The notes under the pieces are model-generated. The model did not search any database and was not told the origin of the DNA. It saw only the letters and a list, made by a program, of their open reading frames with translations. Of a stretch of DNA of 64,000 nucleotides, positions 16,899 to 44,719 are shown one piece after another (within the stretch, counting starts at the first letter, position 1; each line of letters begins with the position of its first letter). The DNA lies in the NCBI RefSeq assembly GCF_000009045.1, contig NC_000964.3:1674001-1738000 (forward strand), written 5' to 3'. Both the position numbers and the translations under genes were made by a program. This DNA is from Bacillus subtilis subsp. subtilis str. 168. Lineage in GTDB: Bacteria; Bacillota; Bacilli; Bacillales; Bacillaceae.

Positions 16899-16902
16899 TC
16901 AC

Positions 16903-16933
16903 AAAAAGAACCCTTTTTGAGGGTTCTTTTTTT
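16903..16933 (+). terminator. Intrinsic (bidirectional-type) terminator after codY
   Basis: AAAAAGAACCCT-TTTTG-AGGGTTCTTTTT, 12-bp stem plus T run. Confidence 0.92.
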
Positions 16934-25741: not shown

Positions 25742-26160
25742 CTTCTATAAGTTCAGAATATAAACTGCCTGAAAAAACGAACACTGTGTCGACGAACAAC
25801 AGCAGCTTGGGGAAAGACGAGTTTTTAAAAATATTAATGACTCAAGTTCAAAACCAAGATCCGCTTAACCCGATTGACGATAAAGAATTTATCAGCCAGA
25901 TGGCGACTTTTTCAAGCTTGGAGCAAATGATGAATCTGAATACGACAATGACTCAATTCGTTGAAAACCAAGATCCGTTTACAACGTATGTTGATTGGAT
26001 GGGAAAAGAAGTATCTTGGACTGATGGTAAAAGTGCAACAGATAAAACAGGCACAGTAAGCTCTGTTAAACATTTTAAAGGAAATTATTATCTCGTTCTT
26101 GATGATGGGACCGAGATCAGTCCTGCGAATGTCATGTCTGTGGGACAATCATCTAAATAA
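25738..26160 (+). CDS. flgD: Flagellar hook cap FlgD (YlxG)
   Basis: FLKILMTQVQNQDPLNP...FISQMATFSSLEQ. Confidence 0.96.
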   Translation: MTSISSEYKLPEKTNTVSTNNSSLGKDEFLKILMTQVQNQDPLNPIDDKEFISQMATFSSLEQMMNLNTTMTQFVENQDPFTTYVDWMGKEVSWTDGKSATDKTGTVSSVKHFKGNYYLVLDDGTEISPANVMSVGQSSK

Positions 26161-26181
26161 AAACATCTGGGGGAATATATT

Positions 26182-26976
26182 ATGTTACGTTCACTTTATT
26201 CTGGAATCAGCGGTATGAAAAACTTTCAAACAAAGCTTGACGTAATCGGTAACAACATTGCCAACGTAAATACAGTAGGATTCAAAAAGAGCCGTGTGAC
26301 CTTTAAAGATATGGTAAGCCAAACGATTGCCGGCGGTTCTGCTGCTGGTGCAACAATCGGCGGAACAAACTCTAAGCAAATCGGTTTAGGTTCATCATCT
26401 GGCACAATTGATACAATTCATTCAACAAGCGCGACACAAAGCACAGGAAGAACACTTGATTTAGCAATTGACGGCGACGGTTACTTCCGAATTGATACAG
26501 GTGACGGGACAGCTTATACAAGAGCAGGGAACTTCTATTTAGATAATACTGGAACACTGGTTACAGGTGATGGCTACCATGTACTAAATATGAATGGCGG
26601 AACAATTAAAATTCCTACTGATGCTCAAAGCTTTAGCATTGGTTCTGATGGAAAGGTGTCAATTGTTGATGCTGAGGGGAAAACACAAGACGGGGGACAA
26701 ATCGGGATTGTTACTTTTGCCAACAGTGATGGATTGGATAAAATCGGAAGCAACCTATACCGTGAATCTTTAAACTCTGGAACGGCCAGTGCAGCGAACC
26801 AGCCTGGTGACGGCGGAACTGGTGCTCTTAAATCAGGATTTCTCGAAATGTCTAACGTCGATTTAACTGACGAATTTACTGAAATGATCGTAGCCCAGCG
26901 CGGATTCCAATCAAACTCAAAAATTATTACAACATCTGATGAAATCCTTCAAGAACTGGTTAACCTTAAACGTTAA
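26182..26976 (+). CDS. flgE: Flagellar hook protein FlgE (short, 264 aa)
   Basis: GNNIANVNTVGFK, DLAIDGDGYF, YTRAG and LEMSNVDL. Confidence 0.95.
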   Translation: MLRSLYSGISGMKNFQTKLDVIGNNIANVNTVGFKKSRVTFKDMVSQTIAGGSAAGATIGGTNSKQIGLGSSSGTIDTIHSTSATQSTGRTLDLAIDGDGYFRIDTGDGTAYTRAGNFYLDNTGTLVTGDGYHVLNMNGGTIKIPTDAQSFSIGSDGKVSIVDAEGKTQDGGQIGIVTFANSDGLDKIGSNLYRESLNSGTASAANQPGDGGTGALKSGFLEMSNVDLTDEFTEMIVAQRGFQSNSKIITTSDEILQELVNLKR

Positions 26977-27015
26977 GGAGGGAGGGGAGGCGAGTAATCG
27001 CTTCTCCGCTGTTTT

Positions 27016-27231
27016 ATGATTAAAGTAACCCGTTTGAACGGGCAGCCCTTTACACTGAATGCGCTATTTATTGAACAGATTGAATGTTTTCCGGATACTA
27101 CAATTACTCTGTCAAATGGTAAGAAGTTTGTAGTAAAAGAAGATGAAGAAGCTGTTCTGGAAAAGATCGCAGCTTTCTACCGAAAAATACAAATATTTGC
27201 AATGGATCAAGGAATAGAGGAACCGGAATGA
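27016..27231 (+). CDS. swrD: SwrD (YlzI), FlbD-family swarming protein (71 aa)
   Basis: MIKVTRLNG...[19 protein letters not shown] FlbD signature. Confidence 0.92.
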
Positions 27232-27650
27232 AGAAAAAGTTAATGATCATATTACTAATTATTCTTATCGTAATTGGTGCTCTCGGGGCGGCGGCTTATT
27301 TTGTTTTAGGCGGAAAGTCCGAAAAAAGTGAAGCGAAAAAAAGTATTGATGAAATCGTTGCGTCTTCTGTTGATGTAGAAGAGATCACAACAAATTTAAA
27401 GTCTGATAACATTATCCGTCTTGCTATTAAACTTGAAACTGATTCTGATAAATCAAAAGAAGAACTTGAGAAACGTGATTTCCAAGTGAAAGACGCTGTT
27501 ATATCACTGCTGGCTGATACGAATGCTGATCAGATTGAGGGAGACAAGGGAAAAGAAACCTTTAAGAAGGAACTAAAAGATAAAATAAATAGCTACCTCC
27601 AAGAAGGAAAAGTAGAAAAAGTGTATATTACCTCCTTTAATCTGCAATAA
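27228..27650 (+). CDS. fliL: Flagellar protein FliL
   Basis: N-terminal TM helix, C-terminal VYITSFNLQ; ATGA overlap. Confidence 0.95.
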
Positions 27651-27683
27651 AGCATAATTTGACAGAATACGGAGGTGAGGAAA

Positions 27684-28682
27684 ATGTCAGGAGAAGTTCT
27701 CTCCCAAAATGAAATAGATGCACTGCTCTCTGCAATATCAACTGGTGAAATGGACGCTGAAGAGCTGAAAAAAGAAGAAAAAGAGAAGAAAGTCAAGGTT
27801 TATGATTTCAAACGTGCGCTGCGGTTTTCTAAGGATCAGATCCGCAGTTTAACGAGAATTCATGACAATTTTGCAAGACTTCTTACCACTCATTTTTCTG
27901 CTCAGCTCAGAACCTATATTCACATATCTGTCAGTTCTGTTGATCAGGTTCCGTATGAGGAATTTATCAGATCGATTCCAAACATGACGATTCTGAATCT
28001 ATTTGATGTTCATCCGATGGAAGGAAGAATTATGATGGAGGTCAACCCCACGATAGCTTATACGATGATGGATCGAGTCATGGGCGGGATTGGAATCAGT
28101 CATAACAAGGTTGACAGTTTGACAGAAATTGAAACAAAAATCATTTCTAATTTATTTGAAAATGCACTGGGTAATTATAAAGAAGCTTGGCAGTCAATTG
28201 CTGATATTGAACCGGAAATGACTGAGTTTGAAGTGAATCCGCAATTTGTTCAGATGGTATCTCCTAATGAAACAGTCGTGGTGATCTCGCTCAATACTCA
28301 AATTGGTGAAATCAGCGGTGTCATTAATCTCTGTATCCCGCATATTGTACTCGAGCCGCTCATACCGAAGCTTTCAGTCCACTATTGGATGCAATCAGAC
28401 CGAAATGAGCCAAAGCCTGAGGAAACAAAGTCGCTTGAAAAACGTATCATGACAGCACAAATACCTGTCGTGGCCGAGCTCGGCACATCTGAACTGACGA
28501 TAGAAGAGTTTTTAAGTTTAGAAGTCGGAGACTGCATAACTTTGGACAAATCAGTCACGGATCCTCTTACTGTATTGGTCGGAGATAAGCCGAAATTTTT
28601 AGGACAAGCCGGCCGGGTGAATCGAAAACAGGCAGTGCAAATTTTAGATCACGACATAAGAGGTGAACAAGATGGAGAATAA
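27684..28682 (+). CDS. fliM: Flagellar motor switch protein FliM (332 aa)
   Basis: LSQNEIDALL CheY-binding peptide and YDFKRALRFSKDQ; ATG 27684 after GGAGGTG. Confidence 0.98.
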   Translation: MSGEVLSQNEIDALLSAISTGEMDAEELKKEEKEKKVKVYDFKRALRFSKDQIRSLTRIHDNFARLLTTHFSAQLRTYIHISVSSVDQVPYEEFIRSIPNMTILNLFDVHPMEGRIMMEVNPTIAYTMMDRVMGGIGISHNKVDSLTEIETKIISNLFENALGNYKEAWQSIADIEPEMTEFEVNPQFVQMVSPNETVVVISLNTQIGEISGVINLCIPHIVLEPLIPKLSVHYWMQSDRNEPKPEETKSLEKRIMTAQIPVVAELGTSELTIEEFLSLEVGDCITLDKSVTDPLTVLVGDKPKFLGQAGRVNRKQAVQILDHDIRGEQDGE

Positions 28683-30210: not shown

Positions 30211-30870
30211 TTGAAAAAGAGTCAATATTTTATTGTTTTTATTTGTTTTTTCGTTTTATTCAGTGTACATCCGATTGCTGCTGCCGCGGCAGACTCTGAT
30301 AATTCAACTGTAAACGAATGGTTTCAAAAGAAAGATGAAAAAACTGCAGATCAATCAGAGCAAAAGAAAGAAAAAACAACAAAAACTGCTGATGAGACGG
30401 AGGGAGCGGCTGCTCCTTCTGTCTCAGCTTTTGATTTTGTAAAGATGATTTTCGCTTTACTGTTTGTTATCGTGCTGATTTACGGGCTGGTTAAGCTCAT
30501 GAACAAAAGAAATCGGCTCCTAAAGCCTTTTCAATATGTTGAAAATATTGGCGGCACATCGGTCGGTCAGAACAGATCCATACAATTGATCAAGGTCGGG
30601 AAAAGTGTGCTCGTCGTCGGTGTAGGAGAGACGATCCAGCTGCTGAAAGAAATTGAGGATGAAAAAGAGATTGAAGTCATTCTCAGTCAGCATGAAGAGG
30701 CAATGTCAAGCAAAATAGAGTGGCAAAAGTTTGTGAAGCCGCTTAAGAGTTCTGAACATCAGCCGCAGCAAAAACTGCCTTCATTTTCAAAAGCATTAAA
30801 AGAGCAACTTGAAGAGTTAAAACAAAACCGTTCTGAAGGAAAGAAGAAAGGCCCACGTCATCATGAATGA
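30211..30870 (+). CDS. fliO: Flagellar export assembly protein FliO (FliZ)
   Basis: Signal-like N-terminus, TM helix, SVGQNRSIQLIKVG..VLVVGV; TTG start. Confidence 0.9.
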   Translation: MKKSQYFIVFICFFVLFSVHPIAAAAADSDNSTVNEWFQKKDEKTADQSEQKKEKTTKTADETEGAAAPSVSAFDFVKMIFALLFVIVLIYGLVKLMNKRNRLLKPFQYVENIGGTSVGQNRSIQLIKVGKSVLVVGVGETIQLLKEIEDEKEIEVILSQHEEAMSSKIEWQKFVKPLKSSEHQPQQKLPSFSKALKEQLEELKQNRSEGKKKGPRHHE

Positions 30871-37735: not shown

Positions 37736-38809
37736 TTGATTCGTGTGCTTGTAGTTGATGATTCAGCTTTTATGAGAAAAATGATAAGTGATTTTCTGAC
37801 CGAAGAAAAGCAGATAGAAGTAATCGGAACTGCGAGAAACGGAGAAGAAGCGCTTAAGAAGATTGAATTATTAAAACCGGATGTTATTACTCTTGATGTT
37901 GAAATGCCGGTCATGAATGGGACAGATACGCTCCGCAAAATTATTGAGATTTATAACTTGCCGGTCATTATGGTGTCTAGCCAGACCGAGAAAGGTAAAG
38001 AATGCACAATTAATTGTTTGGAGATCGGTGCCTTTGACTTTATCACAAAGCCATCAGGCTCAATATCTCTGGATCTATACAAAATTAAAGAACAACTAGT
38101 TGAGCGTGTCGTCGCGGCAGGACTTTCCGGCAAGCGGAAACGTCCTGTTTCCCAGACAGTTCGGCCCGAACCTATTGTGCGTGCTGTCGTTAAGCCTGAA
38201 TTAAGCAAACCGAAACCTGGCACGGGCAGACAAATTGTGTGTATCGGCACATCAACAGGCGGTCCACGGGCGTTACAAAAGGTGATACCGAAGCTCCCTA
38301 AGGATTTGAACGCACCAGTGGTTGTCGTTCAGCACATGCCTGAAGGGTTTACTGCTTCTTTGGCTGATCGGCTGAATCATTTATCTGACATTCAGGTAAA
38401 AGAAGCAAAAGATGGTGAAGCAGCTCTTAACGGCTGTGTTTACATAGCACCGGGCGGAAAAAACATATCCGTTATTAAAAACAGCGAAGGACTCCAGGTT
38501 GTGCTTGATAACCATGACACACCAAGCCGTCATAAACCATCTGCTGATTATTTATTCCGTTCTGTCGGGAAACTGACAGATTATGAAAAAGTAGCGGTTA
38601 TCATGACCGGAATGGGCAGTGACGGCACTGCTGGACTAAAGGACATGCTAACAGCCGGCAATGTGAAAGCCATTGCGGAGTCTGAAGAATCTTGTGTCGT
38701 ATACGGGATGCCAAAAGCTGCTGTTAAAGCGGGTCTCATTCATGAGATTAAACATGTGGAAGATATCGCAGCATCCATCACAAGCTGTGTGAAAAAAGAG
38801 AGGGTGTGA
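37736..38809 (+). CDS. cheB: Chemotaxis methylesterase CheB
   Basis: Receiver domain plus GTSTGG, QHMP and MTGMGSDG; TTG start. Confidence 0.98.
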   Translation: MIRVLVVDDSAFMRKMISDFLTEEKQIEVIGTARNGEEALKKIELLKPDVITLDVEMPVMNGTDTLRKIIEIYNLPVIMVSSQTEKGKECTINCLEIGAFDFITKPSGSISLDLYKIKEQLVERVVAAGLSGKRKRPVSQTVRPEPIVRAVVKPELSKPKPGTGRQIVCIGTSTGGPRALQKVIPKLPKDLNAPVVVVQHMPEGFTASLADRLNHLSDIQVKEAKDGEAALNGCVYIAPGGKNISVIKNSEGLQVVLDNHDTPSRHKPSADYLFRSVGKLTDYEKVAVIMTGMGSDGTAGLKDMLTAGNVKAIAESEESCVVYGMPKAAVKAGLIHEIKHVEDIAASITSCVKKERV

Positions 38810-44680: not shown

Positions 44681-44719
44681 AAAAGGTGATAAGAGGGACT
44701 GCCTTTTATCACCTTTTTT
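44681..44719 (+). terminator. Intrinsic terminator/attenuator between rpsB and tsf
   Basis: AAAAGGTGATAAGAGG-GACTG-CCTTTTATCACCTTTT plus T run. Confidence 0.85.

What the first reader, a model, noticed from the sequence alone, without database searches (positions are those of the whole stretch)
26974..27018. swrD has a split ribosome-binding site bridged by a GNRA hairpin
Seen: no SD lies within normal distance of the swrD ATG (27016). A perfect TAAGGAGG overlaps the flgE stop (26974-81), 34 nt upstream. Between them is a fully paired 10-bp stem, GGGGAGGCGA-GTAA-TCGCTTCTCC (26984-27007). Looping it out leaves ~10 unpaired nt between SD and ATG, a normal spacing. The stem also buries a second SD-like GGGGAGG and is followed by GCTGTTTT. 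Established: hairpin-bridged SDs are known from phage T4 genes. Inference: the element may be a structure-dependent initiation site tuned by ribosomes terminating on flgE, and/or a weak internal terminator that shapes the fla/che expression gradient toward sigD.
Basis: partly seen in the sequence, partly recalled or inferred. Interest (0 to 1): 0.65.

Follow-up and report, generated by a model that had tools for sequence, protein, structure and literature searches.

The report
Hairpin-bridged ribosome site before swrD
The small flagellar gene swrD of this Bacillus subtilis-type genome has its ribosome-binding sequence 34 bases upstream of its start codon with a stable RNA hairpin in between, and this layout is kept, with many different hairpin sequences, across the whole bacterial order, which suggests the hairpin folds the two halves of the start site together as in two phage T4 genes.

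Summary
A strong SD (TAAGGAGG, 26974-26981) overlaps the flgE stop. A 10-bp hairpin (26984-27007, two G-U pairs, -15.8 kcal/mol) follows. Eight bases later comes the swrD ATG (27016), with no SD-like sequence near it.

Comparative data carry the case:
- SD-hairpin-start occurs in 31 of 32 distinct upstream sequences of the genus and 75 of 86 of the order.
- The stems fall into 69 sequence clusters.
- Linear SD-start spacing varies from 27 to 61 nt. Spacing with the hairpin looped out clusters at 9-11 nt.
- Relatives that lost the hairpin have the SD at 7-9 nt.
- Outside the order, 0 of 40 loci have this layout. There, 24 of 40 carry a strong hairpin after flgE followed by a normally spaced SD. 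The hairpin is therefore older than the split arrangement.

The terminator idea is not supported. The U-run is not conserved. Published Term-seq lists no terminator between codY and tsf. flgE and fliM mRNA levels are similar. The GNRA loop and the buried second SD are lineage-specific.

Best reading, at about 0.65: a T4 gene 25/38-type split ribosome-binding site, and I found no earlier report of it. No experiment supports it yet.

The parts
26182..26976 (+). flgE (hook protein) coding sequence; its stop TAA is 26974-26976
   Evidence: ORF. Pfam hits FlgE/F/G D1, Flg_bbr_C and Flg_bb_rod.
26974..26981 (+). Shine-Dalgarno sequence TAAGGAGG, overlapping the flgE stop. It is the proposed 5' half of the swrD ribosome-binding site.
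   Evidence: Sequence. Duplex with the 16S 3' end is -11.7 kcal/mol. An SD in this position just 5' of the hairpin occurs in 106 distinct relatives.
26984..27007 (+). Hairpin with a 10-bp stem (8 Watson-Crick and 2 G-U pairs) and loop GUAA (26994-26997)
   Evidence: Folds (-15.8 kcal/mol, pair probability at least 0.95). Pairing is kept in 96% of cells in close relatives, against 58-68% for slid controls. Stems are replaced by unrelated complementary sequences across the order.
27008..27015 (+). 8-nt single-stranded spacer GCTGTTTT between the stem and the start codon
   Evidence: The stem-to-start distance has a mode of 7-8 nt in 106 relatives. The U-run is confined to the closest relatives. 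In this lineage it is predicted to pair weakly with the SD.
27016..27231 (+). swrD (ylzI, FlbD family), 71 codons. Its stop TGA overlaps the fliL ATG (ATGA at 27228-27231).
   Evidence: ORFs. Pfam PF06289, E = 3e-27, aligned from residue 1.

Best explanation
The flgE-swrD junction is a split, hairpin-bridged ribosome-binding site.

Proposed mechanism:
- The 30S subunit pairs with the strong SD at the flgE stop.
- The 24-nt hairpin stays folded and loops out.
- Only about 10 unpaired nucleotides (2 + 8) then separate the SD from the swrD AUG, instead of 34. This lets the AUG reach the P site.

Origin: the hairpin is older than this arrangement. A stable hairpin just after flgE is common in other classes of the phylum, where it precedes a normally spaced SD. 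In the window's order the SD lies on the 5' side of the hairpin.

Shown: the anatomy, its conservation, the constant looped-out spacing, the turnover of stem sequences, and the lack of termination.

Inferred: that the SD and the folded stem are both needed for SwrD synthesis. Because swrD's stop overlaps the fliL start, the site may also influence FliL.
For: Anatomy and stability are confirmed, and no SD lies near the AUG.

Distribution:
- SD-hairpin-start in 31 of 32 distinct upstream sequences in the genus.
- The same layout in 75 of 86 in the order.
- None of 40 outside the order.

Geometry in the 106 loci:
- Linear SD-start spacing has median 36 (range 27-61, sd 6.0).
- Unpaired spacing has median 9, mode 9-11 (sd 2.4).
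- The two are uncorrelated (r = 0.10).
- Normally organised loci have spacing 7-8.

The hairpins are real:
- Median z is -3.7, with 91% below -2, against 0% for control segments inside flgE.
- Cognate arms pair at median -16.7 kcal/mol, against -7.3 for arms swapped between loci. There are 69 stem clusters.

Natural deletions agree. L021/L022 within the genus, and L091 and L128 in the order, lack the hairpin and have the SD 7-9 nt from the start.

Precedent: T4 gene 38 (22 to 5 nt) and gene 25 (27 to 11 nt), with mutational proof (PMC3014915).

A second locus of the same build in this genome, the yesW-yesX junction, is also conserved.
Against: - No experimental data on SwrD translation, RNA structure or 30S binding could be reached. 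Lalanne 2018 and Hall 2018 are not held.
- Ten unpaired nt plus the width of a helix is at the long end of usual SD spacing.
- In this lineage the SD is predicted to pair partly with the U-rich spacer. The unpaired probability of the core averages 0.23, against 0.67 with foreign spacers.
- The hairpin predates the split layout. Its main job may therefore be something else, and the bridging may be merely tolerated.
- A strict genome-wide scan finds 11 such sites against 7 in a reversed-sequence control. The architecture is not generally enriched.
Confidence: 0.65

Rival explanations
1. The hairpin is chiefly an RNA-level element inherited from the ancestral post-flgE hairpin. It could be a barrier to 3'-to-5' exonucleases, a processing site, or an insulator that stops ribosomes leaving flgE from sliding on. 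In this reading swrD is translated by termination-reinitiation coupling or weak SD-independent initiation. The upstream SD serves to hold ribosomes, or acts as a stabiliser of the cryIIIA STAB-SD kind.
For: - Outside the order, 24 of 40 loci carry a strong hairpin (dG -12 or better). It starts 0-24 nt after the flgE stop and sits before a normal SD, with no U-run. The hairpin therefore has a function that does not need bridging.
- In the split-site loci the SD lies mostly 0-16 nt after the stop, inside the footprint of a terminating ribosome.
Against: - This reading does not explain why the unpaired spacing is held at 9-11 nt while the hairpin span varies. It also does not explain why no SD is kept next to the start in 106 lineages.
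- Wild-type mRNA levels are nearly flat across the junction: flgD 135, flgE 138, fliL 85, fliM 122 TPM. No large stability step is visible.
- As general knowledge, Bacillus ribosomes depend strongly on an SD.
Confidence: 0.2
2. The hairpin plus GCUGUUUU is a weak intrinsic terminator that lowers transcription of the distal fla/che genes, including sigD.
For: The consensus scan reports it as terminator-like: 10-bp stem, 6 G-C pairs, 5 T in the tail window.
Against: - The U-run is separated from the stem by GCUG and is only four U long.
- At least 5 T of 8 occurs in only 10 of 106 related loci.
- The uncut terminator table of Mandell et al. 2021 jumps from 1690934 (codY) to 1719733 (tsf) on the + strand. 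The codY entry matches the window's hairpin at 16899-16932, so the coordinates agree.
- fliM TPM is 88% of flgE TPM.
- RNA-seq contigs of 27-52 kb run through the junction, which is weak evidence.
Confidence: 0.05
3. The hairpin is the binding site of a regulator, either a protein or a small RNA. The regulator would control SwrD/FliL synthesis by stabilising or melting the bridge, as in the E. coli thrS split site, where the interrupting hairpin is the operator.
For: Analogy only.
- thrS has a ribosome-binding site interrupted by a hairpin that the ribosome accommodates (PMC3936740).
- A swrD deletion alters fla/che transcript levels (PMC13740483).
Against: - Stem and loop sequences are not conserved: 69 stem clusters and loops of 3-12 nt. 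That argues against sequence-specific recognition.
- No Rfam family matches.
Confidence: 0.07

Closest known systems
Phage T4 gene 25 and gene 38 split (hairpin-bridged) translation initiation regions (Nivinskas et al. 1999; Malys and Nivinskas 2009; reviewed in PMC3014915)
   Same: The SD lies too far from the AUG (22 and 27 nt in T4, 34 nt here). A stable intervening hairpin reduces the gap to a working distance (5 and 11 nt in T4, 10 nt here). The site is at an intercistronic junction. The arrangement is conserved within a clade and absent from more distant relatives.
   Different: This is a chromosomal gene of a Gram-positive bacterium, not a phage gene of E. coli. It is conserved over a whole order, with at least 69 different stems. 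The hairpin appears to be an older element that the SD moved across. No mutational or probing evidence exists here.
E. coli thrS split ribosome-binding site (Sacerdot et al. 1998, as described in PMC3936740)
   Same: A hairpin lies inside the ribosome-binding region, and the ribosome accommodates it without unfolding it.
   Different: In thrS the SD stays next to the AUG. The hairpin separates it from an upstream single-stranded binding region and is the operator for ThrRS. Here the hairpin separates the SD from the AUG, and no ligand is known.
Intercistronic or 3' stabilising hairpins in polycistronic mRNAs, and SD-based stabilisers such as cryIIIA STAB-SD
   Same: A G+C-rich hairpin without a U-run lies directly after a highly expressed gene (flgE). 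A very strong SD is not adjacent to a start codon.
   Different: mRNA levels are flat across this junction in the published data. The strict spacing relative to the swrD start is not expected for a pure stability element.
Rho-independent terminators
   Same: G+C-rich stem, short loop, some U downstream.
   Different: The U-run is short, offset and not conserved. No 3' end was called by Term-seq, and there is no drop in downstream RNA.

Membership tests
Hairpin-bridged (split) SD initiation region, T4 gene 25/38 type | Linear SD-to-start distance too long for direct initiation (over about 15 nt) | tested here: met
   34 nt between the last G of GGAGG (26981) and the ATG (27016). Median 36 nt in 106 relatives.
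Hairpin-bridged (split) SD initiation region, T4 gene 25/38 type | No alternative SD at normal distance from the start codon | tested here: met
   The last 16 nt give +0.2 kcal/mol against the 16S 3' end. Proximal SD score is below threshold in all 106 split-site loci.
Hairpin-bridged (split) SD initiation region, T4 gene 25/38 type | A stable intervening hairpin whose looping-out gives a functional spacing (about 5-13 nt) | tested here: met
   -15.8 kcal/mol, pair probability at least 0.95, 10 unpaired nt. Relatives have mode 9-11, sd 2.4.
Hairpin-bridged (split) SD initiation region, T4 gene 25/38 type | Phylogenetic conservation of the structure rather than the sequence | tested here: met
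   69 stem clusters; cognate arms -16.7 against swapped arms -7.3 kcal/mol. z-scores. 96% pairing in close relatives.
Hairpin-bridged (split) SD initiation region, T4 gene 25/38 type | Stem-disrupting mutations lower translation, compensatory ones restore it, and the SD mutation abolishes it | not testable with these tools
   Needs reporter fusions and toeprinting. No published data were found.
Intrinsic (Rho-independent) terminator | U-rich tract directly after the stem | tested here: inconclusive
   GCUGUUUU has four U after a 4-nt offset. It passes a loose scan. It is not conserved: 10 of 106 loci have at least 5 T.
Intrinsic (Rho-independent) terminator | Mapped RNA 3' ends and reduced downstream transcript | tested here: not met
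   No entry between 1690934 and 1719733 (+) in the full terminator table of PMC8060035. TPM: flgE 138, fliM 122.
Any Rfam RNA family | Covariance-model match | tested here: not met
   No relevant match even at E up to 10 in 26000-28000.

The most novel reading that the evidence does not exclude
The split site is a ribosome-operated switch that ties SwrD (and, through the ATGA overlap, FliL) synthesis to hook-protein translation. Each ribosome terminating on flgE covers the SD and melts the base of the hairpin. When it leaves, the refolding hairpin delivers a ribosome held on the SD to the swrD AUG. This would fix a SwrD:FlgE ratio. The order would have acquired the switch once, by moving the SD across an ancient post-flgE hairpin.
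Probability: 0.15. Interest if true: 0.75.

Novelty: new member of a known kind. Interest (0 to 1): 0.6.

Why it matters
Hairpin-bridged SD sites are textbook curiosities known mainly from two phage T4 genes. This would be a chromosomal example in the main Gram-positive model organism, whose ribosomes are strict about SD pairing. It is conserved over an entire order, with natural stem swaps and natural hairpin deletions. That offers a ready system for asking how a 30S subunit accommodates a looped-out helix between the SD and the P site. It also matters for gene finders and RBS-strength calculators, which would score swrD as lacking an SD. It matters for flagellar biology too, because SwrD and the downstream FliL set motor power during swarming. 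Finally, the data reveal a widespread, unexplained hairpin directly after flgE in the phylum.

Tried and rejected
- Rfam scan of 26000-28000 at E up to 10 gave nothing relevant.
- Read laying on four RNA runs returned only Logan contigs of 27-52 kb running through the junction. They give no information on ends or levels.
- A plain MAFFT plus RNAalifold run on 29 genus sequences mis-registered the stems and returned a meaningless 5-pair consensus. I replaced it with a narrower alignment using my own structure and with alignment-free tests.
- My first automatic classification was flawed. Weak outer pairs of the minimum-energy fold swallowed the SD. I redid it by fixing the SD first and folding the rest.
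- The hairpin-then-SD class was too generous outside the order. Re-measuring single hairpins gives 24 of 40 with dG -12 or better.
- I tested whether the spacer is selected to sequester the SD. It is not: native 0.50 against swapped 0.61, p = 0.5. The SD-U-run pairing in this genome is lineage-specific.
- A genome-wide scan for the same architecture showed no enrichment: 11 sites against 7 in the reversed control.
- Papers not held: Lalanne 2018 (ribosome profiling, Rend-seq) and Hall 2018 (swrD genetics).
- Literature searches for a prior description of this site or of a flgE-flbD hairpin found none.
- Earlier scan notes held nothing on it.

Full report
WHAT IS THERE. The window is G000:C1:1674001-1738000 of a 4,215,606-bp genome. 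From gene content and size I take it to be a Bacillus subtilis 168-type chromosome. flgE (26182-26976) ends with TAA at 26974-26976, and that stop is the start of a perfect TAAGGAGG (26974-26981). After two bases (GA) comes a hairpin with 5' arm 26984-26993, loop GUAA 26994-26997 and 3' arm 26998-27007. It has ten pairs, two of them G-U. Eight bases (GCTGTTTT, 27008-27015) separate it from the ATG of swrD (27016-27231). The swrD stop overlaps the fliL ATG.

Pfam assigns the three products to FlgE/F/G, FlbD (PF06289, aligned from residue 1) and FliL. An in-frame TAA in the hairpin loop and the conserved N-terminus MIxVTRLNG rule out an earlier start.

The hairpin alone has -15.8 kcal/mol and pair probabilities of at least 0.95. 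The 45-nt element has z = -4.5. It ranks fourth among all 34-nt local folds in the operon. The 16 nt before the ATG have no complementarity to the 16S 3' end, whereas the SD at the stop pairs at -11.7 kcal/mol.

COMPARATIVE ANATOMY. I located swrD homologs as follows:
- in all 49 genomes of the genus;
- in 141 of 151 genomes sampled across 52 families of the order;
- in 119 of 201 genomes sampled across the phylum.

I read the upstream DNA of 49 + 87 + 40 loci (sequences). To classify them I fixed the best SD first and then folded what lies between it and the start. The results:
- The order SD-hairpin-start, with no SD near the start, holds for 31 of 32 distinct upstream sequences in the genus.
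- It holds for 75 of 86 in the order.
- It holds for none of 40 outside the order.

In the 106 split-site sequences, the linear distance from the last G of the SD core to the start has median 36 nt (27-61, sd 6.0). The number of nucleotides left outside the hairpin has median 9 and mode 9-11 (sd 2.4), and is uncorrelated with the linear distance (r = 0.10). The SD-to-stem distance has a mode of 2 nt, and the stem-to-start distance a mode of 7-8 nt. Loci with an ordinary organisation have SD spacing 7-8 nt.

The hairpins are not folding noise. Median z against dinucleotide shuffles is -3.7, with 91% below -2. Equal-length control segments inside flgE give a median of +0.4 and none below -2.

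The stems are also not one conserved sequence. They fall into 69 clusters. A 5' arm pairs with its own 3' arm at a median of -16.7 kcal/mol, but with arms from other loci at -7.3. In the closest relatives, where a sequence alignment is reliable, 96% of cells stay paired, against 58-68% when partners are slid. The changes there pass through wobble pairs.

NATURAL DELETIONS. Two genomes inside the genus (L021, L022) lack the hairpin. They read TAG-GGG-TATAAACA-GTG, an SD at 8 nt. That is what results from excising the hairpin of their nearest relatives. L091 and L128 in the order behave the same way. So lineages keep either a normal linear spacing or a normal looped-out spacing. This is the strongest argument that the SD upstream of the hairpin is the swrD SD.

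THE HAIRPIN IS OLDER THAN THE SPLIT SITE. Outside the order, 24 of 40 loci carry a strong single hairpin (dG -12 or better, often 13-18 bp). It begins 0-24 nt after the flgE stop and is followed, 14-35 nt later, by a start codon with its own normally spaced SD. The remaining loci have a normal SD and no strong hairpin. U-runs after these hairpins are rare. A post-flgE hairpin therefore has some function that does not involve bridging. In the window's order the SD sits on its 5' side. I cannot tell what the ancestral function is. A decay barrier, a processing site, or an insulator between a heavily and a lightly translated cistron are the obvious candidates.

WHAT IS NOT SUPPORTED. The terminator reading fails on several counts:
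- The U-run is short, offset by GCUG and confined to the closest relatives. Only 10 of 106 loci have at least 5 T in the 8 nt after the stem.
- The uncut table of about 1400 intrinsic terminators from Term-seq in Mandell et al. 2021 (PMC8060035) goes, on the + strand, from 1690934 (codY+36) straight to 1719733 (tsf+77). The codY entry coincides with the hairpin I see at window 16899-16932, so the coordinate systems agree. No terminator was called anywhere in the fla/che operon.
- Their wild-type TPM values are flgD 135, flgE 138, fliL 85, fliM 122, fliK 115 and flhA 134. There is no step at the junction.

- The GNRA loop is not a conserved feature. Only 3 of 106 loops are GNRA, and loop lengths run from 3 to 12 nt.
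- The SD-like 5' arm occurs only in some lineages.
- In this genome the SD is predicted to pair weakly with the U-rich spacer. Across the order, native spacers sequester the SD no more than spacers swapped in from other loci (0.50 against 0.61, p = 0.5).

Coupling to flgE termination is possible. The SD core ends 3-16 nt after the stop in most split-site loci, but the distance reaches 28 nt in some.

KNOWN PARALLELS AND NOVELTY. T4 genes 38 and 25 have SD-AUG distances of 22 and 27 nt, reduced to 5 and 11 nt by an intervening hairpin. Stem mutations lower translation. The gene 25 arrangement is conserved in close T-even phages only (PMC3014915). The present site meets every sequence-level criterion of that kind. 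The functional criteria cannot be tested here. [quoted passage not shown]

Searches of the held literature found no description of this site or of a flgE-flbD hairpin. The 2026 SwrD structure paper does not discuss its translation. Rfam has no family for it.

A strict genome-wide scan shows that the architecture is rare and not enriched by chance criteria: 11 sites against 7 in a reversed control. One other site, the yesW-yesX junction, is built the same way and is conserved with changes on both sides of the stem in relatives.

VERDICT. The structure-dependent initiation site is well supported by comparative evidence but untested experimentally (confidence 0.65). The terminator or expression-gradient idea is disfavoured (0.05). 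An RNA-stability or insulator role for the hairpin remains a live rival, or an additional function (0.2). I class it as a new member of a known kind, of moderate to good interest because it is conserved, sits in a model organism and is directly testable.

LIMITS. RNA runs were available only as assembled contigs, so no RNA ends or levels could be read. Two key papers were not held. Genomes in the comparison are unnamed samples of their groups and are not independent.

Noticed in passing
window 30394-30427 (+), inside fliZ (30211-30870): A perfect 14-bp hairpin (-26.5 kcal/mol), the most stable 34-nt local fold of the whole fla/che operon. It lies inside the fliZ coding sequence (codons DETEGAAAPSVS) and is followed by a U-rich tail (AGCUUUUGAUUUUG). 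The Term-seq table of PMC8060035 lists no terminator there.
   Followed up: partly
outside the window: genome G000:C1:772107-772142 (+), locus L178:408-443, yesW-yesX junction: A second SD-hairpin-start site. AAAGGGGG is followed by 2 nt, an 11-bp G+C-rich hairpin (-21.9 kcal/mol), 6 nt and the ATG of a 612-codon ORF, with no SD near the start. It is conserved in 13 relatives of the genus, with stem changes on both sides (CUG/CAG to CCG/UGG, and another stem top in L192).
   Followed up: partly
outside the window: genome G000:C1:1033397-1033436 (-), locus L179: Another candidate of the same build: ACAGGAGGUG, a hairpin, UCUAA, then a TTG start of a 444-codon ORF. It came from the genome-wide scan, and neither the start codon nor conservation was checked.
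   Followed up: no
loci L051, L055, L089, L094, L123, L126, L127, L131 and others, the 7-9 nt before the swrD start: The single-stranded spacer between the stem and the start often reads (G)AUACAUA in many different families of the order, although the stems next to it differ completely.
   Followed up: no
loci L138-L177 (other orders and classes of the phylum): A strong hairpin without a U-run, starting 0-24 nt after the flgE stop and preceding a normal SD for the swrD/flbD homolog, occurs in 24 of 40 loci. Its function is unexplained.
   Followed up: partly
window 27228-27231: The swrD stop TGA overlaps the fliL ATG (ATGA), and fliL also has its own GAGG about 8 nt upstream. FliL synthesis may therefore be partly coupled to swrD translation.
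   Followed up: no
window 38116-38149 (+) and 44682-44715 (+): Two further very stable local hairpins in or at the end of the operon (-19.5 and -19.9 kcal/mol).
   Followed up: no
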